DNA of 64,000 nucleotides from the IMG/VR virus record IMGVR_UViG_3300027747_002221, positions 124,001 through 188,000 of that record. One strand, 5' to 3'. Within the stretch, counting starts at the first letter, position 1, and every line of letters begins with the position of its first letter. Shown piece by piece: positions 42,931 to 57,107 of the stretch. The position numbers and the translations under genes were made by a program. The notes beneath the pieces are model-generated. The model did not search any database. It was not told where the DNA came from and was given only the letters and a program-made list of their open reading frames with translations.

Positions 42931-45900
42931 TTATGCCTGTGCTTCTGTCCAGCTGATACGAGCGTTAATGTTTGCTGGTACGCCTGCAGGAGACAAGTTT
43001 GTTGCACACAATGTAATCATATCAGGACCATCTGGATACTTACCTAGTAAAGTATTAGCCAGTAAAGATGTACCACCACCTAAAATACTTGTACCAATAT
43101 CTCTGGCCAATGACATATCCTGTTGAGTCGTACCTGAAGCATTCGTGAAGAATGAGAACATATTCTCACCGCCAACGATTGGAGTGGCATTAGCATGTAA
43201 AATATATTGTGCCAAGCTTGAACCACCGACGTTTTGCCAACGACCTTCTGCAGGAGTTCCGTTCAGAATAACCTCAATACGATAAGGTGATGTTGTCAAC
43301 GCATCCATTTGGCGTAGAACCAACTGCATACGATTATTAATTTCTCTTGCACCCATTAATCCTGTTAAACCGCTATCGACGCTAGGTGCAACTCGCAAGC
43401 TAATCATAGCATATCTGTTGTTTGTAGGTAAATTGGCAAGAGCAACGTTTTGACCAATGTTAAACACCAACGATTTATCGTCATCATATTTACCATCCAT
43501 AATTACAGATGAACCCCAGTGACTCATTGTAGAAGCAACTTGAGGCGAATACAATGATACTTGTGTTGGTGTATTTGAAGAATATGTAAATTGACTTGGA
43601 GTAATTGTGCCGCCAGCTGTTGCTCTGTTACCTATTGTTAATGCATTGCCTGTCTTTGCAGTATATGTGATATACTCAATATTAGCATTTCTATTTCCTG
43701 CCTGTTGTACAATTACTGTACCTACATTCGGGAAGTTATTTGCATCTAATACTGTTATAGTAGCACCTGTTGTAGCAGAGCTTGCTAATGTTGCGCCTAA
43801 TATTGTATATGGTGCATATGTAGATGTTTCATATCTTGAAGCCATATTACCAGAACGCATATAAGCTTCAGTATTAAAGTTATTATTAACAATACGATGG
43901 CAATATATTACCTCGCCTCTGTTATTTTTAACACCGAATCTAATAGCACCTGCACCATACCATGAGAAGTCCATGTACCACATCTGCATTCTTGATAAAT
44001 CAAGAGTGTATAAACTATGTCCTGTACCGTCTAATTTATCTATGTTCCATATGCTTTGCGGATACTTGGTATCTATTGTTTTACTTACTAAAGAGTTAAT
44101 TACGTTAACTCCTCTGTATTCTGGGAATATATTTAGAACAGTATCAGATTCAATAGATTGAATTTTATAACTTGTTCCTCTGATTACAATCATATCGCCA
44201 GGTTGTAGTTGAGTACCAAATTTAGTAGCATTACCTGTAACGATTATGTTACCTGTGTTGGCAGAAACCGTTCCAGTAATTTGTTGTGTACTAGATCTCT
44301 TAACACAATATATTTGTTGTCCATCATACTCAAAGAAGAAACCATTTTGTTCGTCAAACATACCTAATCTATTTCTTGAACCATACCATGAGTATGGAGA
44401 AACAACGATTGGGAATCCTGTTGTCGTTGTAGCACTTGGTGTAGTATTGCTTGTGTATGTTAGAGTCAATGGAGAAGGTGCACCTGTTACTGCCCATAAA
44501 CCATTATATCCTGATTCATTTACACCACTTACTGTAATGTTTGCACCAACACCTAAACCGTGAGGTACTTTAGTTAAAACTGTTACTGTTGTACCTGATG
44601 ATGTAATATTATCAGGTGTGATGGATGGTCTAAAAATAGAACCAGTACTAAATTGTACACCTTTACCTGATTGATAGCGGAAATATCTACGAGTTTGTCT
44701 TACAAACTGAGAGTTATGTGCTGGTAATTGATTTGTAAATTGAACACCACCGTCAAACGCTCTGTGCTGTACATAACCTGCTGGTCTCATATACAACGTA
44801 TTTGCTGCGGTATTTAGAGTTGCTGCACCTGCAGTCCAAGTAGTTCCAATGTAGCCGTTAGCAATTAAAGTGTTACTTGTTGGTGTGTTTGCCACATTCC
44901 AAATACCATTTAAACCTGTACTTGCTAGAACACCGACGCCTGTAACGCTTGATGTATTGGTAAGCATAATCTGATTGCCAGGTGTTAAACCGTGGGCATT
45001 GGTAGTGTTAACATAAATTACACCACCTGTAACTGATACGTTATTTACTGCAATCGCTGAATTAGAATAGAATGCACCTGCAAATACATATGTCTTAGTT
45101 GGGTCATATAAAATGTTAGATCCAACAACTGAACTTGGTAGACTCGTTACGGGAATAGTTGTTGTTCTATAAGAGAAACTTACGTTACCTGTAATCTGTT
45201 CAATAACGAACCAACCATCTGCATTTGCTGTGTCAAGTGTACCTTGAACATAAATTGGTTGACCAACATAAATGTTAGGAGAAATTGTATCTGCAATGCT
45301 AACAGTAATTTGTGTATTACCGCCACCTGAATGGAATACGTTAGAGATATTCAATTGACCAGGTTGCGCACCCCAAGTTGTAGTTGGGAAGTTAGGTAAG
45401 CCACCGTTAGCAGGTGGAATTCCAGGAGCAGGGGCATTTAAAAAGAATGCTGTTGGTCTGTTATTCATTAGGGAAATACTTTCCCACTTTGTTGGCTGTG
45501 TGCCATATTCAAAGTCTGTATCAATTAATGACTGAGGTTCCGAAACTCTCATCTTACCTACAGGATCAAGTTGTGATTCCGCAGGAGTTGTTTCTTGATA
45601 TGTCTCTTCAACTAAAATCGACAACTTATCTGTACTGCTCATTGCAGTAGTATTATACGCCAAAAGAATAGTTGTTGATTCTACGTTTGTACCTATACCA
45701 GGACCGCCTTGTGTAGCGGTCATGGCATTAACAAATGATGTAGCGGCCAAATTAGGATCGCTAAAGTTGTAGATTACAGTATTACGTGTTACGTTAGTAA
45801 TTAATAATAATTGTTCTCTGCGGATATTCTTACCATTTACAACAACTGTTCTTGTTGCCGGTGTAAATGTGTAACCTTCTAATATTACGTGCTTTGCCAT
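42931..45900 (-). CDS. Large virion structural/tail-fibre protein
   Basis: 989 aa; KMRVSEPQSLIDTDFEYGTQPTKWE, RQTRRYFRYQSGKG; repeated 'T..AHGL..G..I' beta modules. Confidence 0.65.
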   Translation of the reverse strand: MAKHVILEGYTFTPATRTVVVNGKNIRREQLLLITNVTRNTVIYNFSDPNLAATSFVNAMTATQGGPGIGTNVESTTILLAYNTTAMSSTDKLSILVEETYQETTPAESQLDPVGKMRVSEPQSLIDTDFEYGTQPTKWESISLMNNRPTAFFLNAPAPGIPPANGGLPNFPTTTWGAQPGQLNISNVFHSGGGNTQITVSIADTISPNIYVGQPIYVQGTLDTANADGWFVIEQITGNVSFSYRTTTIPVTSLPSSVVGSNILYDPTKTYVFAGAFYSNSAIAVNNVSVTGGVIYVNTTNAHGLTPGNQIMLTNTSSVTGVGVLASTGLNGIWNVANTPTSNTLIANGYIGTTWTAGAATLNTAANTLYMRPAGYVQHRAFDGGVQFTNQLPAHNSQFVRQTRRYFRYQSGKGVQFSTGSIFRPSITPDNITSSGTTVTVLTKVPHGLGVGANITVSGVNESGYNGLWAVTGAPSPLTLTYTSNTTPSATTTTGFPIVVSPYSWYGSRNRLGMFDEQNGFFFEYDGQQIYCVKRSSTQQITGTVSANTGNIIVTGNATKFGTQLQPGDMIVIRGTSYKIQSIESDTVLNIFPEYRGVNVINSLVSKTIDTKYPQSIWNIDKLDGTGHSLYTLDLSRMQMWYMDFSWYGAGAIRFGVKNNRGEVIYCHRIVNNNFNTEAYMRSGNMASRYETSTYAPYTILGATLASSATTGATITVLDANNFPNVGTVIVQQAGNRNANIEYITYTAKTGNALTIGNRATAGGTITPSQFTYSSNTPTQVSLYSPQVASTMSHWGSSVIMDGKYDDDKSLVFNIGQNVALANLPTNNRYAMISLRVAPSVDSGLTGLMGAREINNRMQLVLRQMDALTTSPYRIEVILNGTPAEGRWQNVGGSSLAQYILHANATPIVGGENMFSFFTNASGTTQQDMSLARDIGTSILGGGTSLLANTLLGKYPDGPDMITLCATNLSPAGVPANINARISWTEAQA

Positions 45901-46399: not shown

Positions 46400-47296
46400 T
46401 TAGAATGTGATTGTACCTGAGCTATAGAATTTATATACAACATATCCGCCTGAAGATGTTACGACTACATTAGATCCTGTGGTACTTGCAGCAGAAAATT
46501 CTGTAGGATGACGTAAAACAACTATACCAGAACCACCTTGTCCAAATTGCCCAGCACCCGATTGTCCGCCACCTCCACCTCCACCTCCGCCGGTGTTAGT
46601 TAAACCATTATTAACTGCGCCGCCGCTTGAAGGTTGTCCTCGGCCACCGCCCCCCGCACCGCCATTTCCTCCGGGTGTGCCGTCGCCACTTCCCCCGCCG
46701 CCGCCGGCATAGGCAACATTTGCACCTGTAATTAAACTATATCTTCCGTCCCCACCGTTACCCACCGTTACACCGTTGCTACCTACAGCACCTGCGCCCC
46801 CTCCCCCGGCGCCAAAGCCGGCGGCGGTTCCACCTGCAAATCCTTCTACCGGAGTATAGCTACCTGCATTGCCCGGACCTGCCTGCCCAATAGTTTGATC
46901 GCCTGCTGATACATAACCGCCACCGCCGCCGCCGGATCCGCCTGATCTACCATGTCTGTTTGCAGGTGTGACAGAATATGTTCCTCCACCTCCACCTCCA
47001 GATGCGGTTATTGTGGAAAATACAGAATTTGTTCCGTTAGCTCCAAAAGTGGCTGCAGTAGTTCCCCCGGCACCTACGGTGACCGTTATTGGGGTTCCCG
47101 GGGTGAAATCACTATAACCTGTATTAGTTCTGTAGCCGCCGCCCCCACCTCCGCCACCTGCTGAATTACCGCCTGAGCCGCCCCCAGCAACAACTAAATA
47201 TTCTAATGTGAGGACAGAACGGAGAGGAACATTTGCCGAATTTAATCGGTTGTTAACATTATTAAAATTTCTTGCCGTATGGCGTTTTGTTGACAT
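46400..47296 (-). CDS. Glycine-rich (polyglycine II) adhesin-like protein 1
   Basis: EYLVVAGGGSGG...GGGGGGG...YAGGGGG...GGSGIVVLR...VYKFYSSGTITF. Confidence 0.75.
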   Translation of the reverse strand: MSTKRHTARNFNNVNNRLNSANVPLRSVLTLEYLVVAGGGSGGNSAGGGGGGGGYRTNTGYSDFTPGTPITVTVGAGGTTAATFGANGTNSVFSTITASGGGGGGTYSVTPANRHGRSGGSGGGGGGYVSAGDQTIGQAGPGNAGSYTPVEGFAGGTAAGFGAGGGGAGAVGSNGVTVGNGGDGRYSLITGANVAYAGGGGGSGDGTPGGNGGAGGGGRGQPSSGGAVNNGLTNTGGGGGGGGGQSGAGQFGQGGSGIVVLRHPTEFSAASTTGSNVVVTSSGGYVVYKFYSSGTITF

Positions 47297-47628
47297 TAGT
47301 ATATCTCTGAACCAAACAGATTAAAGGTTACGTTACCTTGTAACGAGTAAACTTGCACAGTATCTGTTGCATCCAAAGTCATACCAAGTGTTAATGCAAT
47401 TGCATCCTGTGCAGGTAATGCGGTATCATATGCAATATAGGCATTAGATGGTGTTGGGCTGGTACCTCTGGGAATTACTGCAATCCTAAATGTTACATTG
47501 GATTGAGATAAACTACATATATTTAATGTGGAAATAACTGCACTATTTCCTGCAGGTACGGTATATAATGTTGCATTTGCATTTGCTGCAGGAAAAGCCT
47601 GTCCTAGAATTTTATATTTAATTGTCAT
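47296..47628 (-). CDS. Virion structural protein
   Basis: YKILGQAFP...TLYTVPAG..AVISTLNIC. Confidence 0.62.
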   Translation of the reverse strand: MTIKYKILGQAFPAANANATLYTVPAGNSAVISTLNICSLSQSNVTFRIAVIPRGTSPTPSNAYIAYDTALPAQDAIALTLGMTLDATDTVQVYSLQGNVTFNLFGSEIY

Positions 47629-47825: not shown

Positions 47826-48662
47826 TTAATTCAAATCTTTGTTCTTGATGGAAAAGACCGAACCTTTGTCTATTTCTATTGAATTCCTCAAATTTCTAAT
47901 TTTTGGTCTCCTTTTTTCGCTCTGTAGCATAGAGTTTGCCCCTATTACTAATAGAATAGCTAACGGATCAAACACTATGATTATGAGTAAAATCATCCAT
48001 GATACTGCTTTTTCCAATATACTTGTGTCCGTTGCCCCATACATAAATGCTGCAATATACTTTATAGGACCTACTTCGGCCTCGACCTTTCGTACTTCAG
48101 CTGCGATTGGCGCACGCTCCTCGCTAATGGCAGCAACAATTTTCTGTTCGGCTTGGATCTCAGACTGAAGCCTTGCACGTTCTTTCTGCTGGGCACGTCT
48201 AATAGTAACTGCCTTCTCCGCACCCGTTTCTGAACTGCTTCTTGCCATGACTTGGTCCACTGCCTCATCCATTTGTTTAAGAGCTTTACGGTTCGCATCA
48301 ATATTATCCTTTGCTGCTTTAATCTTTTCGTCATATATGGATATTTTTGCCAGCACGTCACCTGACACTAAATTTTGATCGCTATGGGCTTTGGATAAGA
48401 ATCCGAATATACCCATGGATGTTAGTAGGGATAAAACTACAACACTGGTAATAAAATACGTTTTCATCAATGTGTTTATTTTGTTCCATTGTCTATATAC
48501 GTAGGATGCTGTTACAAGTTTGCCCACTTCAAGAGCTGCGCCCATTATTAGAATAGGAGTTGGGCTAGCTGAAAAGATATAGGTCAATCCCATGATTGAA
48601 AAATATCCTGCTATACCTGAAATAGCTAAAGCTGTTCCCAATAATATAGCTGCAAAAATCAT
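47826..48662 (-). CDS. Membrane protein with central coiled coil
   Basis: Three N-terminal TM segments, coiled coil, EVGPIKYIA, IIIVFDPLAI TM. Confidence 0.72.
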   Translation of the reverse strand: MIFAAILLGTALAISGIAGYFSIMGLTYIFSASPTPILIMGAALEVGKLVTASYVYRQWNKINTLMKTYFITSVVVLSLLTSMGIFGFLSKAHSDQNLVSGDVLAKISIYDEKIKAAKDNIDANRKALKQMDEAVDQVMARSSSETGAEKAVTIRRAQQKERARLQSEIQAEQKIVAAISEERAPIAAEVRKVEAEVGPIKYIAAFMYGATDTSILEKAVSWMILLIIIVFDPLAILLVIGANSMLQSEKRRPKIRNLRNSIEIDKGSVFSIKNKDLN

Positions 48663-49300
48663 TGAGCCATTAACCTATCTACAAAATTTAACAGTAAGGC
48701 GTGATGCTCACCGTTATGGTATTTTCCTTTTAGCCAACTGTAACTATCATACCAAAATTGTTCGCTTTCAGGATGGCAACCTATAAGTCCTATGTTCTTT
48801 TGAATAATCGCCATCGCATCACCGTTTGCATAAGTAGCGATTGTTTTGTAGTTTCCATTACCAACCAGAGCACAACCATCGTAAAAAAACATCTTTGTGT
48901 CAATTCCATCCCAGTTGATTTCAATATTCTTAGCATGAGGTCTCCTTGTGTCAGTTTTTGGTTGCGTGATATATTGTACTGCATCCACTTTATTTAATAT
49001 GTTAAGATAATGACTACCTGCCCAATAGGCACCCATACAGATGCCTAGATATTTGCCGCCACGATTGACAAAATCAATAACACTAGTTTCGTTATGTTTG
49101 AATAAATTTTTGTAACTATTGCTATCCCCAATGCCGCCAGGAACAGCTATCATATCTACATCGTCAAAGAAATTATTTTCTAGTTTATTTTTGGAAAATA
49201 GTTTAAAACTATACTTATTCCCTAACGATTTCATAATACCATTGCCACTCTGCACTGAGCATTTTGGGTCATGGATAAATAATGCTATAGTTTTTTGCAT
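48659..49300 (-). CDS. BPL_N/class I glutamine amidotransferase-like protein
   Basis: VPGGIGD, YLGICMGAY (nucleophile Cys), GLIGCHPE. Confidence 0.8.
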   Translation of the reverse strand: MQKTIALFIHDPKCSVQSGNGIMKSLGNKYSFKLFSKNKLENNFFDDVDMIAVPGGIGDSNSYKNLFKHNETSVIDFVNRGGKYLGICMGAYWAGSHYLNILNKVDAVQYITQPKTDTRRPHAKNIEINWDGIDTKMFFYDGCALVGNGNYKTIATYANGDAMAIIQKNIGLIGCHPESEQFWYDSYSWLKGKYHNGEHHALLLNFVDRLMAQ

Positions 49301-49301
49301 T

Positions 49302-50057
49302 TTAAAATGGTTTCGTTGCGCTCTGTGTCACTGTGCCGTTGTTGGTGACAGTTTGTGTACTTGATGAATCTGTAGTAACAGCTGCACCCAACATTAAATA
49401 TTCAGTATATGCATCAATCGTTAGTTCTATACTGGGAGCTGATACTGTACTATTATTCGTATCATATCTTGCTTCACCTATAGTAACTCTAAAATTAGTT
49501 ATGTAACCGGGAAAATATCCACCATAGTATCTACCCACTTGATCAGATGAACCATACCAATCATACGAATCTATACAAGTTCCTGCAGGAAAACTAGTAG
49601 GATCAAAATTACCTGCTGCAAATGATGCACGATAGCATGTAACAGGTGCACCTGGACTACCCAATGTGCCTACATACATTGTTTCTAAACCATTGGGGTT
49701 GCGGTTTAAAATAATATATTGCCATGTGTTTGTTTGTAATGTTCCAGGAGACCAAGTATAAGTTATTGTGCCATGTCCGCCAGATACATCTAACATGATA
49801 TTATAATCATCAGTTGTAAATAGATGCATACCATATTCATTGGTAGTACCTAACCATCCCCTGGAAGTAAAATCGCTATTATTATAAAACCAGCCTTCTA
49901 TTGTAAAAGCTCCAGCGCTCATAGTTAAACCTGGATTTAAACTCAAATATTGATTGGTGCCGTTAAAACTTAAACTACCTCGTAGTGTGGGACCAGGGAG
50001 AGGCGGGGGAGGAGAAACTGTTATTCCTCCGTTAATTCTTGTCCCATTTATTAGCAT
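49302..50057 (-). CDS. LamG/concanavalin A-like domain virion protein
   Basis: SLSFNGTNQYL, FTIEGWF, WQYI, GYITNFRV. Confidence 0.82.
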   Translation of the reverse strand: MLINGTRINGGITVSPPPPLPGPTLRGSLSFNGTNQYLSLNPGLTMSAGAFTIEGWFYNNSDFTSRGWLGTTNEYGMHLFTTDDYNIMLDVSGGHGTITYTWSPGTLQTNTWQYIILNRNPNGLETMYVGTLGSPGAPVTCYRASFAAGNFDPTSFPAGTCIDSYDWYGSSDQVGRYYGGYFPGYITNFRVTIGEARYDTNNSTVSAPSIELTIDAYTEYLMLGAAVTTDSSSTQTVTNNGTVTQSATKPF

Positions 50058-50065
50058 ATATTTCC

Positions 50066-50746
50066 TTAGAACGGATTCAATGAAGAACTTGTTACAGCAC
50101 CATTATTAGTAATTGTTATATTATTTGTTGACGAATCTTTTAGGAAATTAGCATCATTCGAGGTGTTTAATAATAATTGGGTACCCCCGATTGCACTCAA
50201 TGGTGAGGTAGGGACAGTAATTGTTGATCCGATGTAAAGTGCTGTGCCGCTAACAATTCTAAAATTGCTTATACGACCATTAAAATAACCATTACCTTGC
50301 ACCGCACTATATGCAATATCAATTGATCTATTTGCTGTACTATTATATCCTATGCCACTTTGGGACATTACAGAAACTCCGTTTACATAAAGTGTAAGAG
50401 TTCCACTTGCTCTTACTAATGCAATATGATGCCAGGTCCCTACAGTTATTACTGTATTAGTAGCACTATTGCGTATACCGCCTTCACCAAAGTAGTAAAT
50501 ACCCCCATTACCATTAAGATCTACATTATCACGATCAGAACTAAAATACCACAAACGCCCAGAAAGATTATTGGGGTAAATCCAGGTTTCCATAGTAAAA
50601 TCGTTTGTTCCAAAAGCAAACGCAGAACTTGACGGGGTATTTAAATATTGACTTGTGCCATTAAAGGATAAACTACCCTGCAATACGGGGGCTGCCGGAG
50701 GAGAAATTGTCATTCCACCTTGTTGTCTCATTCCTGTTATTATCAT
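50066..50746 (-). CDS. LamG/concanavalin A-like domain virion protein
   Basis: SLSFNGTSQYL, DFTMETWIY, WHHIALVR...LYVNG, FNGRISNFRIV. Confidence 0.88.
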   Translation of the reverse strand: MIITGMRQQGGMTISPPAAPVLQGSLSFNGTSQYLNTPSSSAFAFGTNDFTMETWIYPNNLSGRLWYFSSDRDNVDLNGNGGIYYFGEGGIRNSATNTVITVGTWHHIALVRASGTLTLYVNGVSVMSQSGIGYNSTANRSIDIAYSAVQGNGYFNGRISNFRIVSGTALYIGSTITVPTSPLSAIGGTQLLLNTSNDANFLKDSSTNNITITNNGAVTSSSLNPF

Positions 50747-50750
50747 ACGG

Positions 50751-51695
50751 TTATCCGGTAAATGTTATCGTTCCTGGTCCAGTAAATGTATAATATACAT
50801 TGCCATTTGAAGTAGTAACAGTGTTACTACCTGTAATATTAGATGTTGCAGTAAAATATGCAGGATGTGCAAAAATAGCCACGCCTGATCCGCCAGCTCC
50901 GCTTGCCGATGTGGCGGTGTGTGCACCAGCACCACCTCCACCGCCGGTATTTACGTTACCGGCAACAGCCTGGAATGCTGTACCTGGCGGATTCTCTCCG
51001 CCGCTCCGTCCGCCTCCGCCGAGGCCACCGGGACTAGGAGCAACGGGAGAAAAACTATAATCTGCAGCTCCACCGCCGCCGCCGGCATAATAATTACCAT
51101 TTACCCATGCATTACCATCGCCGCCATATCCTTGTAATGTTCCAGTTTTTCCTGTAGTACCAGCGCCACCGCCCCCACCGCCATACTGTCCGCCACCTGT
51201 TCTTGAATTTCCTGGGGCGCCAGGATTTCCCTGTCCTGCTGTACCTGTACCGCCCGTATTGTTTGGGCCTCCACTACCTGCTGAATTTCCTGCACCTCCG
51301 CCCGATCCCCCGGGACGACCATTGTACTGTGGTGAGAAGTATCCTGTGCCGCCACCGCCACCGCCTGCAGCAGTTAATGTGCCTGTTAACGGAGAAGCTA
51401 AGATTGAGGGTGTACCGGGTTCGCCCCAGTTACCGCCATATGGCGCGCCAGCATTTCCTGCACCACCGCCACCTATTTGTGTAACGGCAAAGCTAGCAAA
51501 CACTCCTGTTGATAATACAAAACTGTTTGCAATATATCCACCTGCACCACCGCCGCCACCATAATAATTGGCACCTCCACCGCCGCCTCCGCCAACCAAT
51601 AGATATGATAATGTAAAGGGCGGGGGTGGGGGTGGCGGTGGTTCGATGTATTGTGCGCCGCCAGATAATACTGCGCCGCCTGTTAAAATTAACAT
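50751..51695 (-). CDS. Glycine-rich adhesin-like protein 2
   Basis: Leader + poly-Pro + polyglycine motifs; ends TFTGPGTITFTG. Confidence 0.75.
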   Translation of the reverse strand: MLILTGGAVLSGGAQYIEPPPPPPPPFTLSYLLVGGGGGGGANYYGGGGGAGGYIANSFVLSTGVFASFAVTQIGGGGAGNAGAPYGGNWGEPGTPSILASPLTGTLTAAGGGGGGTGYFSPQYNGRPGGSGGGAGNSAGSGGPNNTGGTGTAGQGNPGAPGNSRTGGGQYGGGGGGAGTTGKTGTLQGYGGDGNAWVNGNYYAGGGGGAADYSFSPVAPSPGGLGGGGRSGGENPPGTAFQAVAGNVNTGGGGGAGAHTATSASGAGGSGVAIFAHPAYFTATSNITGSNTVTTSNGNVYYTFTGPGTITFTG

Positions 51696-51704
51696 ATTAT
51701 TTCC

Positions 51705-52847
51705 TTAAAATAAGATTGTACCTGAGCTGGTAAATTGATAAACTCTATATCCACCACTTACTGTTATTGTAGGTGAGCCGGTAGTTGTAGTAGCTGCTGT
51801 GTAAGTATCAGGATAACGTATAATTACTATACCTTTACCGCCTGCACCGCTTGGACCACCGCCACCTCCGCCTCCACCGGTATTTTCTGCTCCGTCTAAT
51901 ATGCAGTTTGCAATGGCATTAGTTTGCCCTGGTTTTGCACCACCGCCGCCTGCGCCGCCATACCCTACTCTACGTCCTGCGCCGCCACCTGCATAATACC
52001 TACCTGTACTAGTAATTGCTACTCCTGTATTTGTAGCTGTACCGTTTACATTCATGTAATAAATACCTGTACTACCTGTACCCGTACCTCTTGCAATTAT
52101 ATACGAATTAGCTGGAATTCCGGTACCAGTAACTTGTGTACCTACATCAATTATTCCATCACTAACTGCGGTTACAGTTAATGTATTATTTGAGGAAAAT
52201 ACTGATGCTGTTCCAGTGAAAGGAATTGTTGCATTGCTTTTTACCCCAATGCCACCAAAGCCCTCTGTAGCGGCTGTGCCACCTTGACCACCTGCACCAC
52301 CACCACCCGAACCGTTATCGTTACTATTATTTGTACCGCAATCATATCCCTGGCCGGTAGTTCCTAAACCTTGTACACCCATAATTTGGGCGGCACCTCC
52401 ACCACTACCACCATTACCAACACCTTCTGTGTCATAACGGCGAGGCGAAGTGCCAGAGCTGTTTGGTCCGCCAGCGCCGCCACCAAGTGATGTAATTGTT
52501 GTTATACCACTACCAGATATGGACGAGTTACTACCTTTAAATCCGGAAGTTTCTTCACCATTTACGCTTGCACCACCTGCACCAACTGTAATAGTGTATG
52601 TTACATTTGAACTAATACCAGTTAAGACAGATTCTGCATTTGCACCTCTACCTGAAGATTCGCCGGCGATTGAAGAACGATATCCACCAGCACCACCGCC
52701 ACCTGAGCCAATTGCATCATATCCTCCACCGGAGCCGCCGCCTGCAACAACTATAAATTCTAACGTAGTAGGGGGAGGAGGTGGGGGAGGAGGTATATAT
52801 GTTGCGCCTCCAAATATTGTTGCTCCGCCTGTGATTGTAATTGGCAT
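51705..52847 (-). CDS. Glycine-rich adhesin-like protein 3 (with inserted domain)
   Basis: Same scaffold; extra segment of about 70 aa before YYAGGG. Confidence 0.75.
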   Translation of the reverse strand: MPITITGGATIFGGATYIPPPPPPPPTTLEFIVVAGGGSGGGYDAIGSGGGGAGGYRSSIAGESSGRGANAESVLTGISSNVTYTITVGAGGASVNGEETSGFKGSNSSISGSGITTITSLGGGAGGPNSSGTSPRRYDTEGVGNGGSGGGAAQIMGVQGLGTTGQGYDCGTNNSNDNGSGGGGAGGQGGTAATEGFGGIGVKSNATIPFTGTASVFSSNNTLTVTAVSDGIIDVGTQVTGTGIPANSYIIARGTGTGSTGIYYMNVNGTATNTGVAITSTGRYYAGGGAGRRVGYGGAGGGGAKPGQTNAIANCILDGAENTGGGGGGGGPSGAGGKGIVIIRYPDTYTAATTTTGSPTITVSGGYRVYQFTSSGTILF

Positions 52848-52859
52848 CTTATTTCCTAA

Positions 52860-53816
52860 TTAAAATGTGATTGTTCCTGAGCTGGTCCAAATATATATTC
52901 TATATCCACCTTCTATAATAACATTTGGACTGCCCGTAGTATTCGATGCGGCTGTGTATGTATCTGCATATCTAATAATAGCTACACCTTTTCCGCCGTT
53001 CCCTCCACTTGCTGATCCTGCTGGGTATGAAACTCCTCCACCACCACCGCCTGTGCCTGAAGTTCCATTTGTTCCTGGTATACTCGCGCCGGTGGCGCCT
53101 GCTCCGCCACCACCAGCTCCACCAGCTCCACCTGCGGCACTTGCTCCACCCCCACCGCCGCCGCCGGCGAAATATACATTACTGCCAACAACATTTCCTA
53201 TATTATAAGTTGTGGCTTGTGTTGTAGTAATGATTGTCGAAACTTTACCGATACCACCCGCTTTGCCTGTAGTGCCAACGCTCGCCCCGTCCTCACCTGC
53301 AGCACCTGCTCCACCTCCGCCTCCGCCTGAATAAGCTCCGCCAGTACCACCACGATTACCAAATCCTCCACTAGCACTAGTAGGTTGTAGTCCTGCCCCA
53401 TATGTGGTATGATCGGCTCCGTTCCACGATGCTCCGCCACCTGAACCACCTGCTGTGGCATTTGTATATGGACCATAAAAACCACCCGTGCCTCCACCAA
53501 TAGCTATAACATTACTCGAAGCCAAGATAGATGAGTTCGAACCATTATTGCCGCCGCCGCCGGTGCCGCTTACGCCTGTTCCACCTGCTCCAACAATTAC
53601 TGTTATGAGAGACCCTATGGTAATAGGTAATGCAGTATTTGCTACATATCCTCCTGCACCACCACCACCGCACCCTAAATTAGGAGCACTTGCGCCCGAA
53701 CCACCGCCAGCTACTACCAGATATTCTACTGAACTAAGTACCGGTGGAGGAGAAGGTGGAGGAGGTGTTAAATTAAATCCTGAAAGTGATACGCCGCCTG
53801 AGATTGTAATTGGCAT
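52860..53816 (-). CDS. Glycine-rich adhesin-like protein 4
   Basis: Same scaffold; ends WTSSGTITF. Confidence 0.75.
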   Translation of the reverse strand: MPITISGGVSLSGFNLTPPPPSPPPVLSSVEYLVVAGGGSGASAPNLGCGGGGAGGYVANTALPITIGSLITVIVGAGGTGVSGTGGGGNNGSNSSILASSNVIAIGGGTGGFYGPYTNATAGGSGGGASWNGADHTTYGAGLQPTSASGGFGNRGGTGGAYSGGGGGGAGAAGEDGASVGTTGKAGGIGKVSTIITTTQATTYNIGNVVGSNVYFAGGGGGGGASAAGGAGGAGGGGAGATGASIPGTNGTSGTGGGGGGVSYPAGSASGGNGGKGVAIIRYADTYTAASNTTGSPNVIIEGGYRIYIWTSSGTITF

Positions 53817-53824
53817 CTTATTTC

Positions 53825-53884
53825 CTACCTAAATGTAATTGTTCCAGATTGCCAGAATCTGAAAATGATGTTTTGCGTTTGCAT
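53825..53884 (-). pseudogene. Orphan C-terminal remnant of a glycine-rich paralog (19 codons)
   Basis: MQTQNIIFRFWQSGTITFR, versus NIIYRFWQSGTIIFN at the end of 54824..55774. Confidence 0.8.
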
Positions 53885-53888
53885 AAAT

Positions 53889-54815
53889 TTATCCAACGAA
53901 TCTTATTGTGCCAGGACCAGTAAATGTATAATATACATTGCCATCTAAAGTAGTAACAGTATTACTACCTGTAATATTAGATGTTGCGGTAAAGTACGAA
54001 GGATGTGCAAAAATAACTACCCCTGATCCTCCAGATCCTCCGGCAGTGGCTCCACCTGCCGGATGGGAACCTGCGCCGCCACCGCCCCCAGTATTTACGT
54101 TGCCTGCAAGAGCAAGGAATGTTGTTCCCGGAGGATTTGCGCCGGATCCTCGACCGCCGCCGCCTAAACCACCAGGAGAAGGTGATAGGTTAGCAAAATT
54201 ATAATCTTGCCCACCTCCTCCTCCGCCTGCATAGTAATTACCATTTATCCATGCATTACCGTCACCACCTTGACCTTGCAAGGGACCTGTTCTTCCTGCA
54301 GTACCAGCACCACCGCCCCCACCTCCAGTTTGTCCAAGGGGTGGTCTTGAATTTGCAATTCCGCCAGGATTTCCTTGTCCAGCTGTACCTGCACCTCCAG
54401 TATTAGCTGGTCCTGAGTTGCCAGATGGATTTGCTGCTCCGCCACCCGATCCGCCAGATAGTCCATTAAAGTTAACGCCATCATTTGTACCGCCACCACC
54501 ACCACCTACGGCAATAAGATTTGCACTAAATGCTGCAGAAGATAGGGTTGACGGGGTGCCACTTGCACCTGCTGCACCGCCCCCAGCACCCCCGCCCCCC
54601 AGTGTAAAATTAAAACTATACGAAGATAAGGTGGGCACCACAATACTATTGGCAATATAGCCTCCAGCACCGCCGCCTCCAGCATAAAATGCCCCGCCGC
54701 CGCCACCCCCGCCTGCTACTAATAGATAACTTAATGTAAAGGGTGGTGGTGGCGGAGGTGGAGGGGTAAGGGTAAGCCCTGAAAATATTACACCGCCGCT
54801 AATTGTTAATGCCAT
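53889..54815 (-). CDS. Glycine-rich adhesin-like protein 5
   Basis: Close paralog of 50751..51695. Confidence 0.75.
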   Translation of the reverse strand: MALTISGGVIFSGLTLTPPPPPPPPFTLSYLLVAGGGGGGGAFYAGGGGAGGYIANSIVVPTLSSYSFNFTLGGGGAGGGAAGASGTPSTLSSAAFSANLIAVGGGGGGTNDGVNFNGLSGGSGGGAANPSGNSGPANTGGAGTAGQGNPGGIANSRPPLGQTGGGGGGAGTAGRTGPLQGQGGDGNAWINGNYYAGGGGGGQDYNFANLSPSPGGLGGGGRGSGANPPGTTFLALAGNVNTGGGGGAGSHPAGGATAGGSGGSGVVIFAHPSYFTATSNITGSNTVTTLDGNVYYTFTGPGTIRFVG

Positions 54816-54823
54816 ATTGTTTC

Positions 54824-55774
54824 CTAATTAAAAATAATTGTTCCGGATTGCCAGAATCTGTAGATGATGTTGGCATTGGCATAGGTTACGTTTGGTGAAC
54901 CTGTGGTTGTTGCAGTTGCAAATGTATTTGGATAACGAATAAACGCAATACCAGAACCACCAGCAACACCATTAATAAATGGTGATCCGCTTGGGGAGGT
55001 TCCTCCACCGCCTGCACCACCTCCAGTATTTACGGTACCTACAGTACCCAAACCTGAGCCCACCGCCCCTGCGCCACCGCCACCTAAACCGCCTGTGCCT
55101 GCAGTTCCTCTACCGTTCCATGTGCCGCCACCACCACCGCCAGCATAATACACATTAGCACCTGTTATTGTAGAGGGTGATCCGTCTCCGCCTGAACCAG
55201 CACCACCAGCTCCGCCAGATCCACCAACTGCTCCTGCACCACCTCCACCCCCACCTCCATAATTATTACCAGGTGAACCCGACCCACCAGGATTGCCTTG
55301 TCCAGGCGTCCCTGTTCCGGCAGCACCTGCCGTTGGAGCAGGACCATAGCCTCCACCTCCACCTGATCCTCCAGGTTTTCCTGCATAACCAGTAGCAGAA
55401 GTTATACCGCCACCGCCACCGCCGCCAATGGCAATTACATTTGATGCATAGGATGCTGCAGTTATCGAAGTATTTGCGCCATTTGCACCTGCAAGAGTAG
55501 CTTCTACGTTAGCAGAACCTATACCTCCAGCACCACCTGCGCCAACTGTTATTGTATATAACGTACCGGGAGTGACTGCCAATGCACTATTGGTTATTAA
55601 TCCTCCTGCGCCAGCTCCAGCAACACCACCATCATTACCAACAGTGGCCCCTGAACCACCGCCCCCCGCAACAACTAAATATTGTACTGAACTAAGTGGG
55701 ACAGGTGGAGGTGGTTCAGATGCATATAACGCGCCGCCTACTAATGCCATTCCGCCTGTGATTGTAATTGACAT
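54824..55774 (-). CDS. Glycine-rich adhesin-like protein 6
   Basis: Same scaffold; ends RFWQSGTIIFN. Confidence 0.75.
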   Translation of the reverse strand: MSITITGGMALVGGALYASEPPPPVPLSSVQYLVVAGGGGSGATVGNDGGVAGAGAGGLITNSALAVTPGTLYTITVGAGGAGGIGSANVEATLAGANGANTSITAASYASNVIAIGGGGGGGITSATGYAGKPGGSGGGGGYGPAPTAGAAGTGTPGQGNPGGSGSPGNNYGGGGGGGAGAVGGSGGAGGAGSGGDGSPSTITGANVYYAGGGGGGTWNGRGTAGTGGLGGGGAGAVGSGLGTVGTVNTGGGAGGGGTSPSGSPFINGVAGGSGIAFIRYPNTFATATTTGSPNVTYANANIIYRFWQSGTIIFN

Positions 55775-55783
55775 ATTATGTTC

Positions 55784-56701
55784 CTAACTAAATGTGATTG
55801 TTCCTGAGCTATAGAAGTTGTATACAACATTTCCACCTGAAGATGTTACAACTACATTAGCTCCTGTGGTATTTGCAGCAGAATATGCAGAAGGATGACG
55901 CAAAACAACTAATCCAGACCCGCCGGTTGCTCCCACCCCTCCATACGAACTAGCCCAACCGCCACCGCCACCGCCACCACCAGTATTAGTATTACCATCT
56001 ATGCCGGCATTATTACTGAAATTACCAGCGCCACCGCCGCCTGTGCCACCTGTACCTTGTGTACCTGGTCCATTTCTAGTTCCGCCTCCACCGCCGCCTG
56101 CGTAATTTAATCCAGTTATACTAGATGATGTGCCAGCTCCACCATTACCAGCAACACCCGGTGTTATCCCATTTGCATTTACACCTGCAGAAGCAGAGCC
56201 ACCGCCACCGCCACCCAAATACGCGGGTGAAGTAGTGCCTGTGCCGCCTGCGTATCCTTCTACCGGACTATAACTGCCTTCATTTCCTGTGCCTCCTAAT
56301 GGGTGTCCTCCAGAACCACCTCCGCCGGATCCGCCATTTTGTCCCGGAAGCGTACCTGGCCCTTGATCTGCGCCGACCCCGCCACCTCCGCCAGTAGTGG
56401 AAATACTAACCACACCGCCTATTAATGATGAATTGGCGCCTTTGCCGCCCTGTTGAAGAGCACCGGCATTGGCCTGCCCTGCAGAACCTCCGCTGCCAAC
56501 AGTAATAGTATATGGGGTGCCTGGGGCAATAGTTACGGTAGATTGTCTTAATCCTCCAGCACCACCGCCTCCCCCGCTATTACCGGCACCTCCGCCCCCA
56601 CCTGCAACTATTAGATAATCTATTAAACTAAGTGGGGGAAGCGGCACAAATACGGATAGCCCGTTTGATATTGCCACTCCGCCTGTGAATATAACTGGCA
56701 T
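55784..56701 (-). CDS. Glycine-rich adhesin-like protein 7
   Basis: C-terminus closely matches 46400..47296. Confidence 0.75.
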   Translation of the reverse strand: MPVIFTGGVAISNGLSVFVPLPPLSLIDYLIVAGGGGGAGNSGGGGGAGGLRQSTVTIAPGTPYTITVGSGGSAGQANAGALQQGGKGANSSLIGGVVSISTTGGGGGVGADQGPGTLPGQNGGSGGGGSGGHPLGGTGNEGSYSPVEGYAGGTGTTSPAYLGGGGGGSASAGVNANGITPGVAGNGGAGTSSSITGLNYAGGGGGGTRNGPGTQGTGGTGGGGAGNFSNNAGIDGNTNTGGGGGGGGWASSYGGVGATGGSGLVVLRHPSAYSAANTTGANVVVTSSGGNVVYNFYSSGTITFS

Positions 56702-56702
56702 A

Positions 56703-57107
56703 TTATTTTCCTATTTTTATATGCGTTCTATGTACTCTGCATTGTATTTGGCCATTATAATAATCTTCAGTTTCCAATACTCTGCGATCCATTTGTTCTC
56801 TTGCCTCAAGATAATTACAAGATCCCTTATTGGGACAAATATGTAATATCTCTCTTATAAATTTATCTGTTCCAACTGTCTCTACATCCTTTTTAACTTC
56901 TTCGGATGAGGACCAATAATCTCGCCAATCTGATTCGACCTTTATACGCTTCTTTTTGCCCTTAACCTGTTTAGTTTTACGAAACCAAAAAAGTTTTTTA
57001 CCTATGTATTTCCGTCCAGTAACAGTATTTGTAATCAAATATACATAACCATACGCAGTTTCTGGTATTTCCTCAAAGGGAATATTATTATAAAGCCACA
57101 TAAACAC
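56703..57107 (-). CDS. GIY-YIG nuclease (Seg-like, short)
   Basis: YGYVYLITNTVTGRKYIGKK...WRDYWSS...REILH. Confidence 0.82.
   Translation of the reverse strand: MFMWLYNNIPFEEIPETAYGYVYLITNTVTGRKYIGKKLFWFRKTKQVKGKKKRIKVESDWRDYWSSSEEVKKDVETVGTDKFIREILHICPNKGSCNYLEAREQMDRRVLETEDYYNGQIQCRVHRTHIKIGK

What the first reader, a model, noticed from the sequence alone, without database searches (positions are those of the whole stretch)
49302..56701. Shared N-terminal docking leader + poly-proline linker on two different head folds
Seen: six glycine-rich genes and both LamG genes start with a leader of about 16 aa (for example MPITITGGATIFGGATY, MALTISGGVIFSGLTL, MIITGMRQQGGMTIS) followed by a Pro-rich run of up to 8 prolines. 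The paralog at 46400 lacks it. Inference: a common plug-in anchor lets interchangeable lectin or PGII heads compete for one virion attachment site on a rigid PPII stalk, forming a modular display system.
Basis: partly seen in the sequence, partly recalled or inferred. Interest (0 to 1): 0.62.

Follow-up and report, generated by a model that had tools for sequence, protein, structure and literature searches.

The report
Shared N-terminal tag on phage adhesins
Eight tandem genes of an uncultured 222-kb freshwater phage encode small adhesin-like proteins that carry the same kind of ~17-residue N-terminal tag and a proline linker in front of two unrelated receptor-binding folds; the tag is most likely a portable attachment peptide, a new variant of the known modular design of phage receptor-binding proteins.

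Summary
Eight minus-strand genes (49302-56701) each start with a 15-19-residue strand-turn leader built around Gly-Gly turns. A Pro-rich linker follows: eight prolines in three genes, only two consecutive prolines in two genes.

- **Heads.** Six heads are TNF-like plus polyglycine domains (Pfam Gly_rich_2). They have the fold of the cyanophage Pam3 tail-fibre tip and a Bxb1 tail-tip protein. Two heads are LamG/ConA-like lectin domains.
- **Specificity.** In the 222-kb genome the motif occurs only in these genes.
- **Spread.** Metagenomic relatives carry the same leader on at least five head types. A syntenic relative has a different set of cassettes at the same locus.
- **The 46400 paralog.** It lacks the leader because it is coupled to a 110-aa protein that is fused to such heads in other phages.

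The modular-anchor reading is therefore plausible, but binding is not shown.
- The LamG and glycine-rich leaders of this phage are distinct subtypes.
- Leaders evolve faster than heads.
- The proline run is not universal.
- No docking partner was identified.
- A homotrimer co-fold gave no answer.

Verdict: a real feature and a new variant of the known "conserved N-terminal docking peptide" design. Interest is moderate.

The parts
55784..56701 (-). Glycine-rich head gene 1 (305 aa). Leader 56645-56701, the most degenerate one. Short Pro/Leu linker 56627-56644.
   Evidence: (Gly_rich_2, 75.9 bits). Its 3' end is 87% identical in DNA to that of the leaderless paralog (family D11).
54824..55774 (-). 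Glycine-rich head gene 2 (316 aa). Leader 55721-55774. Linker 55697-55720 with four Pro.
   Evidence: (67.5 bits).
53889..54815 (-). Glycine-rich head gene 3 (308 aa). Leader 54765-54815. Eight-Pro linker 54741-54764.
   Evidence: (73.9 bits). It is a close paralog of 50751-51695 (families D5, D10 and D16).
53817..53888 (-). Frameshifted relic of the last ~22 codons of a gene like 54824-55774. It sits in the spacer before the next leader.
   Evidence: It aligns with the 3' end, stop, ribosome-binding site and start of the junction upstream of gene 3.
52860..53816 (-). Glycine-rich head gene 4 (318 aa; the one modelled). Leader 53766-53816. Linker 53742-53765.
   Evidence: 76.9 bits; pLDDT 87.7; leader 62-73 and without secondary structure; Pam3 fibre Z 13.4, Bxb1 tail tip Z 13.8.
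51705..52847 (-). Glycine-rich head gene 5 (380 aa). Leader 52794-52847. Eight-Pro linker 52770-52793. It carries a ~60-residue insertion in one head loop.
   Evidence: 44.6 bits; insertion at alignment columns ~320-385.
50751..51695 (-). Glycine-rich head gene 6 (314 aa). Leader 51642-51695. Eight-Pro linker 51618-51641.
   Evidence: (44.2 bits).
50066..50746 (-). LamG/ConA-like lectin head gene (226 aa). Leader subtype 2 at 50702-50746. Linker 50678-50701.
   Evidence: Laminin_G_3, 71.2 bits; pLDDT 78.8; leader 56-59 and unstructured; laminin G, pentraxin and neurexin folds.
49302..50057 (-). Second, divergent LamG-like head gene (251 aa). Leader subtype 2 at 50013-50057. Linker 49980-50012.
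   Evidence: (Laminin_G_3, 29.0 bits; cut-off 27.6). Orthologue in L025 (10708-11463) has an eight-Pro linker.
56703..57107 (-). SegE-type GIY-YIG homing-endonuclease-like gene directly upstream of the array.
   Evidence: PF19835, 131 bits. It holds the same position in the syntenic relative L025, whose array differs.
47296..47628 (-). 110-aa protein. Its stop overlaps the start of the leaderless glycine-rich gene. It is the likely anchor supplied in trans.
   Evidence: The same domain is fused N-terminally to glycine-rich heads in P0112 and L016:6357-7421. A second such gene pair lies at genome 194804-196110.
46400..47296 (-). Leaderless glycine-rich paralog (298 aa) with a ~28-residue basic N-terminal extension.
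   Evidence: (75.7 bits).

Best explanation
The eight genes encode small modular receptor-binding (adhesin) proteins of the virion.

Each protein has three parts:
1. A 15-19-residue N-terminal leader of short strand-prone segments with alternating hydrophobic residues, separated by Gly-Gly turns.
2. A Pro-rich spacer.
3. A head. It is either a TNF-like plus polyglycine domain, homologous to the distal receptor-binding part of the Pam3 tail fibre, or a LamG/ConA-like lectin domain.

The leader is the attachment element. It is disordered on its own. I infer that it becomes ordered by adding its strands to a tail, baseplate or fibre protein. It would thus play the part of the N-terminal docking domain of Pam3 gp24, or of the short conserved docking peptides of secondary receptor-binding proteins in branched systems. 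The proline run is only a stiff spacer of variable length.

The array grows and is reshuffled by recombination at the conserved junction (C-terminal strands, stop, ribosome-binding site, leader), next to a homing-endonuclease gene.

Shown: the anatomy, the head folds, the leader's spread over unrelated heads, and the variable cassette content. Inferred: virion incorporation, docking by strand addition, and the identity and number of sockets.
For: - **Specific to these genes.** The leader is specific to them and above chance.
- **Head fold.** Z 13.4 over 173 residues to Pam3 fibre gp24 (residues 94-280) and Z 13.8 to a Bxb1 tail-tip chain. Profile-to-sequence match to the Pam3 fibre at E 0.0012.
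- **Position of the leader.** Pam3 gp24 has an N-terminal baseplate-docking domain before the same head (PMC9608196). The leader here occupies that position.
- **Leaders are unstructured in monomer models.** pLDDT is 62-73 and 56-59, while the heads are confident.
- **Same leader on other heads.** It occurs on LamG, glycine-rich, Lcl_C-like and unassigned heads in other viral contigs. One contig has near-identical leaders on two different heads (L051).
- **Neighbourhood.** Leader genes follow giant fibre-like proteins in L012-L016.
- **Variable content.** The syntenic relative L025 has other cassettes at the same locus.
- **Alternative N-terminal modules.** Relatives carry the 110-aa domain, fn3, TIG or long shafts before the same heads, often through a short Pro-X-Thr linker.
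- **A cultured relative.** Pelagibacter phage HTVC103P has such a head on a fibre-like protein next to genes annotated as structural.
- **Found in RNA libraries.** Exact contigs of the array occur in two lake metatranscriptomes.
Against: - No partner was found and no binding is shown.
- The homotrimer co-fold gave no answer.
- Leaders are the least conserved part. LamG pairs with 89% identical heads have 31% identical leaders. A strict docking peptide would be expected to be conserved.
- The glycine-rich and LamG leaders of this phage differ in subtype, and leaders on different heads are not more alike within genomes than between them.
- There is no virion proteomics for any leader-bearing protein.
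- The RNA-library contigs may be carried-over DNA.
Confidence: 0.5

Rival explanations
1. The leader is a self-assembly element. Three leaders would form a small trimeric beta structure, or swap strands with the conserved C-terminal hairpins, and so nucleate trimerisation of the head. Attachment to the virion would be made by something else.
For: - Pam3 gp24 is a trimer held mainly by its N-terminal domain.
- The leader looks like two or three six-residue strand-turn units.
- By homology, both termini of the glycine-rich head lie at its proximal end.
- One LamG homologue (P0045) ends with a leader-like motif at its C-terminus.
Against: - The homotrimer co-fold gave no answer, which is not evidence either way.
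- The same leader sits on LamG and other heads that have no known need to trimerise.
- Leaders vary strongly between proteins with near-identical heads.
Confidence: 0.2
2. The docking target is the capsid rather than the tail. The heads would then be Hoc-like decoration proteins that bind many equivalent capsid sites, giving a mosaic adhesive head.
For: - The proteins are small and possibly monomeric, with short anchors and flexible spacers.
- Eight different heads are easier to place on many capsid sites than on a few baseplate sites. This is inference only.
Against: - All solved or annotated relatives of the heads are tail-fibre, tail-tip or baseplate-associated.
- The array lies beside fibre-like genes (989-aa protein, 40% identical to S-PM2 p175), not in a capsid module.
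Confidence: 0.1
3. The leader has no function of its own. The likeness would be common descent of tandem duplicates, plus a conserved DNA junction that serves translation initiation and recombination.
For: - The junction is repeated at DNA level: five copies of 56 nt at 68-82% identity (family D7).
- A relic of a deleted gene end lies at one junction.
- The ribosome-binding sites are strong and uniform.
Against: - The peptide pattern is kept on unrelated heads in distant contigs with different codons and residues.
- The two LamG genes are not duplicates of the glycine-rich genes.
- The pattern is exclusively N-terminal.
Confidence: 0.1
4. The leader is a processing or export signal, for example a double-glycine-type leader removed by a peptidase. 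A gene for a class-I glutamine-amidotransferase-like protein lies inside the cluster (48659-49300).
For: - Gly-Gly motifs lie near the N-terminus.
- The conserved BPL_N/GATase-like gene is embedded among the cassettes here and in L025.
Against: - By inspection there is no charged n-region, no long hydrophobic core and no lipobox.
- No C39 peptidase or transporter was seen.
- The leader lacks the helical consensus of double-glycine leaders (my own knowledge, not tested).
Confidence: 0.05

Closest known systems
Tail fibre gp24 of myocyanophage Pam3 (PDB 7YPX/7YFW; PMC9608196)
   Same: Same head: a TNF-like sandwich plus a glycine-rich lattice with variable distal loops (Z 13.4, 29% identity over 173 residues; profile E 0.0012). 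The order is N-terminal attachment element, then head.
   Different: Pam3 uses a ~90-residue alpha-helical trimerising and baseplate-docking domain and a dedicated chaperone. Here a ~17-residue strand-turn leader plus a Pro linker takes that place. The proteins here also have ~30 extra, highly conserved C-terminal residues. There are six paralogs rather than one fibre.
Tail-tip protein of mycobacteriophage Bxb1 (PDB 9D93, chains Qa/Qb)
   Same: Best structural match of the head (Z 13.8, 34% identity over 177 residues). It is part of a solved tail tip.
   Different: The Bxb1 chain has ~57 other residues before the head. I could not read how it is anchored, because the paper is not in the library.
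Branched receptor-binding-protein systems with short conserved N-terminal docking peptides (K1-5, SP6, KP32, KP34, Menlow, PhiK64-1; PMC6872550, PMC13352976)
   Same: Several receptor-binding proteins of one phage carry a short N-terminal peptide (7 to some tens of residues) before different heads. It plugs them into a branching domain of another tail protein.
   Different: Those heads are trimeric depolymerase tailspikes, and the socket is a T4 gp10-like domain. Here the heads are lectin-like or polyglycine domains and the peptide family is unrelated. Only a sub-threshold gp9/10-like match exists in the genome (22.4 bits; cut-off 25). Binding is untested.
gp38 adhesins of T2/S16-type phages
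   Same: Small proteins (about 250-300 aa) with a polyglycine receptor-binding domain, attached by their N-terminal part to the tip of a fibre.
   Different: gp38 did not appear among the fold matches. It has a folded N-terminal attachment domain and a beta-helix, and no TNF-like sandwich (PMC9608196).
Giant virion structural proteins of cyanomyoviruses (e.g. Syn33_092; phrog_701, phrog_2295, phrog_3545)
   Same: They hold the same LamG and glycine-rich modules and are annotated as virion or baseplate proteins.
   Different: There the modules are internal domains of proteins of thousands of residues. Here they are separate small proteins, each with its own leader.

Membership tests
Pfam Gly_rich_2 (PF21722) | Profile match above the curated cut-off (24.3 bits) | tested here: met
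   The six array genes score 44.2-76.9 bits and the paralog 46400-47296 scores 75.7 bits. A seventh and eighth copy in the genome are seen.
Pfam Laminin_G_3 (PF13385), ConA-like lectin/glucanase superfamily | Profile match above the cut-off (27.6 bits) and a LamG sandwich fold | tested here: met
   71.2 bits for 50066-50746. 29.0 bits, just above the cut-off, for 49302-50057. The model matches laminin G, neurexin and pentraxin domains at E 1e-7 to 1e-5.
Pam3 gp24-type tail fibre | TNF-like plus glycine-rich distal domain | tested here: met
   Z 13.4, rmsd 2.8 over 173 residues. Sequence profile E 0.0012.
Pam3 gp24-type tail fibre | N-terminal alpha-helical trimerising and baseplate-docking domain | tested here: not met
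   No helix is predicted before the head. Residues 1-28 are leader plus Pro linker.
Pam3 gp24-type tail fibre | Homotrimer | tested here: inconclusive
   The three-copy co-fold scored 0.00 (mark 0.42). The verdict was 'no answer'.
Branched RBP systems with conserved docking peptide | Short N-terminal peptide shared by several receptor-binding proteins of one genome | tested here: met
   Eight genes carry it, in two subtypes.
Branched RBP systems with conserved docking peptide | A T4 gp10-like branching domain in a primary tail protein | tested here: inconclusive
   PF07880 matches only weakly (22.4 bits; cut-off 25; positions 3-35) in a 522-aa fibre-like protein at genome 107534-109102.
Branched RBP systems with conserved docking peptide | Physical binding of the peptide to the socket | not testable with these tools
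No partner was tested.
gp38 (T2/S16) adhesins | gp38-type polyglycine sandwich with an N-terminal attachment domain | tested here: not met
   No gp38 chain appears among the Foldseek or VIA-align matches. The N-terminus is a 17-residue leader, not a folded domain.
Sec/Tat signal peptide or lipoprotein signal | Charged n-region, hydrophobic core of 10 or more residues, cleavage site or lipobox | tested here: not met
   By inspection of the eight N-termini: no basic residues in six of them, hydrophobic runs broken by Gly-Gly, and no Cys. No predictor was run.

The most novel reading that the evidence does not exclude
The Gly-Gly leader is a portable ~17-residue virion-docking tag used by a wide group of uncultured aquatic myophages. 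It would hang at least five classes of adhesin heads on common sockets by strand addition. Cassette arrays next to a homing endonuclease would then give combinatorial, quickly exchangeable host recognition. Such a tag could be reused to display foreign domains on these virions.
Probability: 0.25. Interest if true: 0.7.

Novelty: new variant of a known kind. Interest (0 to 1): 0.45.

Why it matters
Host recognition in the large uncultured phages of lakes and oceans is mostly unknown. If the leader is an attachment tag, it marks receptor-binding proteins in metagenomes whatever their head fold.

It would also explain how polyglycine and lectin modules can be "unbundled" from the giant fibre proteins of cyanomyoviruses into exchangeable cassettes. 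And it would offer a very short handle for display or host-range engineering.

If the leader is only a folding element, the array is still a clear case of tandem expansion of Pam3-type fibre tips.

Tried and rejected
- **Homotrimer co-fold** of the 318-aa protein, three copies with alignment A1: score 0.00, verdict 'no answer'. It is not evidence either way.
- **Megablast of the array and tblastn of a whole glycine-rich protein** against cultured phages found nothing. The tblastn blank is probably due to the low-complexity filter, because the last 50 residues alone found Pelagibacter phages HTVC103P/104P.
- **Within-genome likeness of leaders on different heads** was not above between-genome likeness: means 0.239 and 0.238, permutation p 0.47. 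Only L016 and L051 show it. I reran it from references.
- **Leader-like motifs inside other proteins of the genome** (a Rosetta-stone clue to a partner): none found. The best internal match is E 0.37.
- **T4-type late promoter octamer** is not enriched in the window: 11 matches against 9.8 expected.
- **'Joints' between array genes in metagenome contigs** all have flanks under 30 nt in Gly-codon repeats. I rejected them as unreliable.
- **ESM Atlas look-up of the 110-aa protein** returned only unnamed viral clusters.
- **Literature.** No paper mentions PF21722. The Bxb1 structure paper is not in the library.
- **Host.** There is no psbA in the genome, so a cyanobacterial host is not indicated.

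Full report
**Where the window lies.** The window is bases 124001-188000 of a 222,055-bp IMG/VR virus record rated complete. Its 989-aa protein (42931-45900) is about 40% identical to virion structural proteins of cyanomyoviruses such as S-PM2 p175. Ribonucleotide reductase, dCMP deaminase and DNA ligase genes lie nearby. It is therefore a T4-like myovirus, distant from cultured cyanophages. It has no psbA. It occurs in freshwater metagenomes.

**The observation.** Eight consecutive minus-strand genes fill 49302-56701. Six are Pfam Gly_rich_2 proteins of 305-380 aa, and two are Laminin_G_3 proteins of 226 and 251 aa.
- Each starts with a 15-19-residue leader: Met, alternating hydrophobic and Thr/Ser residues, Gly-Gly, four residues, a second Gly-Gly (or Ser-Gly), and three or four more residues.
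- A Pro-rich stretch follows. It is eight prolines in three genes, 4+3 in one and four in two. Two genes have only two consecutive prolines.
- The paralog 46400-47296 has the head but a different, basic N-terminus.

**Is it more than chance?**
- A loose start-anchored pattern finds 7 of the 8 genes in the whole genome and otherwise only an antisense artefact.
- Pro runs of three or more in real genes are confined to these leaders and one unrelated C-terminus. The many Pro-rich plus-strand ORFs are merely the reverse complement of Gly codons.
- An HMM of the six glycine-rich leaders, without the prolines, separates them (E about 1e-8 to 1e-11) from 265 other N-termini of the genome (best E 0.8).
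- That HMM sees the two LamG leaders of the window only weakly (E 0.4 and 7.8), so they are a second subtype.
- The link is made by intermediates. LamG homologues from metagenomes carry leaders of the glycine-rich type (E 2e-5 to 4e-4).
- A profile iterated without the two window sequences then finds them at E 0.0014-0.03, against 0.6 or more for unrelated ORFs.

**What the heads are.**
- The AlphaFold model of 52860-53816 is confident (pLDDT 87.7, pTM 0.86), except for the leader (62-73, no secondary structure).
- It matches a tail-tip chain of mycobacteriophage Bxb1 (Z 13.8, 177 residues, 34% identity) and the tail fibre gp24 of cyanophage Pam3 (Z 13.4, 173 residues). The TNF-like/glycine-rich domains of ALK and LTK follow at Z about 5.
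- The family profile also finds the Pam3 fibre by sequence (E 0.0012).
- In Pam3 this head is the distal, receptor-recognising part of a trimeric fibre. Its N-terminal helical domain docks to the baseplate (PMC9608196).
- The proteins here have about 30 further C-terminal residues (four short strands). These are the best-conserved part of the family.
- The LamG model (pLDDT 78.8; leader 56-59) matches laminin G, neurexin and pentraxin domains.
- Both module types occur inside giant virion or baseplate proteins of cultured cyanomyoviruses.
- The glycine-rich head is common in uncultured Caudovirales and in Pelagibacter phages. In Pelagibacter phage HTVC103P a glycine-rich protein found through the conserved C-terminal 50 residues lies beside genes annotated as structural.

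**The leader elsewhere.**
- A head-independent DNA scan of IMG/VR for the first eight leader residues returned 31 stretches. By my estimate roughly 20 would be expected by chance, depending on the size of the collection.
- About 17 of the non-self hits are true gene starts that continue with the second Gly turn and a linker.
- Their heads are glycine-rich domains (one to four per protein), one to three LamG domains, an Lcl_C-like domain (below its cut-off), a ~312-aa repeat protein without a Pfam match, and 342-aa and 312-aa proteins without a match.
- One contig (L045/L051) has nearly identical leaders on two different heads. L016 has a genome-specific leader variant on a three-LamG protein and on two glycine-rich proteins.
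- Leader-bearing genes often follow giant fibre-like proteins (L012-L016).
- The linker varies: a Pro run, a Thr/Pro-rich stretch (L050), a few residues, or nothing.
- A short Pro-X-Thr linker also precedes the glycine-rich head behind fn3, TIG and LamG modules. The proline run is therefore a linker variant, not part of the tag.

**The locus is a cassette site.**
- A syntenic 221-kb contig (L025) has the same flanks: nrdA/B, deaminase and the SegE-like endonuclease on one side; the BPL_N-like gene, the 278-aa membrane protein, the 109-aa gene, the leaderless glycine-rich gene, the 155-aa gene and a 986-aa protein on the other.
- L025 has no glycine-rich cassettes behind the endonuclease gene. 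It has three leader-bearing LamG genes instead, one with an eight-Pro linker.
- Within the window the junction (C-terminal strands, stop, ribosome-binding site, leader) is repeated at 68-82% DNA identity (family D7).
- The 72-bp spacer 53817-53888 is a frameshifted relic of the end of a gene like 54824-55774.

**How the leader evolves.**
- Among LamG homologues with 89% identical heads the leaders are only 31% identical. The C-terminal ~40 residues stay 62-85% identical even when heads fall to 25-34%.
- Among the six paralogs, mean identity is 41% for the leader, 36% for the head core and 47% for the C-terminus.
- Leaders on different heads are not more alike within a genome than between genomes (p 0.47).
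- So the pattern is conserved but not the sequence. That fits a backbone-driven strand addition or frequent module exchange. It does not fit a strictly conserved peptide for a single socket.

**The leaderless paralog.**
- The start of 46400-47296 overlaps the stop of the 110-aa gene 47296-47628.
- A second pair of the same kind lies at genome 194804-196110, behind a 2560-aa protein.
- In P0112 and in L016 the 110-aa domain is fused directly in front of a glycine-rich head.
- The paralog therefore most likely gets its N-terminal anchor in trans from the 110-aa protein. This is inference from the fusions and the coupling.

**Mechanism and rivals.**
- The best reading (confidence about 0.5) is that the leader is the attachment element of small adhesins. 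It would dock by strand addition to a tail, baseplate or fibre protein, and the Pro run would be a spacer.
- The rivals are a self-assembly element (0.2), capsid rather than tail docking (0.1), no function beyond shared descent and a recombination or translation junction (0.1), and a processing signal (0.05).
- The only complex job, a homotrimer of the modelled protein, gave no answer.
- A candidate socket is a 522-aa fibre-like protein with a sub-threshold gp9/10 N-terminal match, outside the window. It was not tested.
- Exact contigs of the array occur in two lake metatranscriptomes. This fits expression but does not exclude carried-over DNA.

**Comparison and novelty.**
- The design principle is known from K1-5, SP6 and many Klebsiella phages: several receptor-binding proteins of one phage carry a short conserved N-terminal peptide before different heads (PMC6872550; PMC13352976).
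- New here are the peptide family itself, its pairing with polyglycine and lectin heads instead of depolymerase spikes, its spread over at least five head types in uncultured aquatic phages, and the tandem cassette array beside a homing-endonuclease gene.
- I found no paper on this leader or on PF21722.
- I rate it a new variant of a known kind, of moderate interest (0.45). The feature is real and testable, but its function is inferred.

Noticed in passing
window 53817-53888: The 72-bp 'spacer' is a frameshifted relic of the last ~22 codons of a glycine-rich gene like 54824-55774. It is a trace of a deletion or recombination at the conserved junction.
   Followed up: yes
window 56703-57107; L025:9612-10004: A SegE-type GIY-YIG endonuclease gene sits directly upstream of the cassette array. 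It is conserved in the syntenic relative whose cassette content differs, so homing-endonuclease activity may promote exchange at this site.
   Followed up: partly
window 47296-47628 + 46400-47296; genome 195781-196110 + 194804-195781; L016:6357-7421; P0112: A 110-aa protein is translationally coupled to a leaderless glycine-rich protein, twice in the genome. The two are one fused polypeptide in other phages (a Rosetta-stone link). A similar 112-aa protein is annotated 'putative structural protein' in Pelagibacter phage HTVC103P (L059:2070-2408).
   Followed up: partly
window 48659-49300 and 47826-48662: A BPL_N/class-I glutamine-amidotransferase-like gene and a DUF4407-like membrane coiled-coil protein are embedded between the cassettes and the fibre genes. 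Both are conserved in L025. Their role is unknown.
   Followed up: no
alignment A2, last ~40 residues (window 50066-50185 and 49302-49420): The C-terminal tail of the LamG proteins stays 62-70% identical where the heads have diverged to 25-34%. It resembles the strands that normally open the next LamG_3 domain in tandem arrays, as if the cassette had been cut out of a multi-LamG protein.
   Followed up: partly
window 51705-52847 (protein residues ~205-280): One glycine-rich paralog has a ~60-residue insertion in a head loop. It may be a diversified receptor-binding loop.
   Followed up: no
P0031, P0035, P0036, P0069, P0070 (LamG homologues): LamG heads up to about 80% identical to 50066-50746 (P0031, P0035, P0036) carry a quite different ~55-75-residue N-terminal module instead of the leader; the more distant P0069 and P0070 (about 40% identical) carry it too. 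This is a second exchangeable N-terminal module.
   Followed up: no
P0105-P0108, P0113, P0119, P0185: Some relatives combine both head types of the window in one chain of about 520-550 aa. The order is leader, LamG, glycine-rich in some and leader, glycine-rich, LamG in others.
   Followed up: no
genome 107534-109102 (outside the window; L060): A 522-aa fibre-like protein has a sub-threshold match to the N-terminus of T4 gp9/gp10, the classical fibre sockets. It is a candidate docking partner.
   Followed up: partly
window 50751-56701: Contigs identical to parts of five of the six glycine-rich genes occur in two lake-water metatranscriptome runs (X8, X12).
   Followed up: partly
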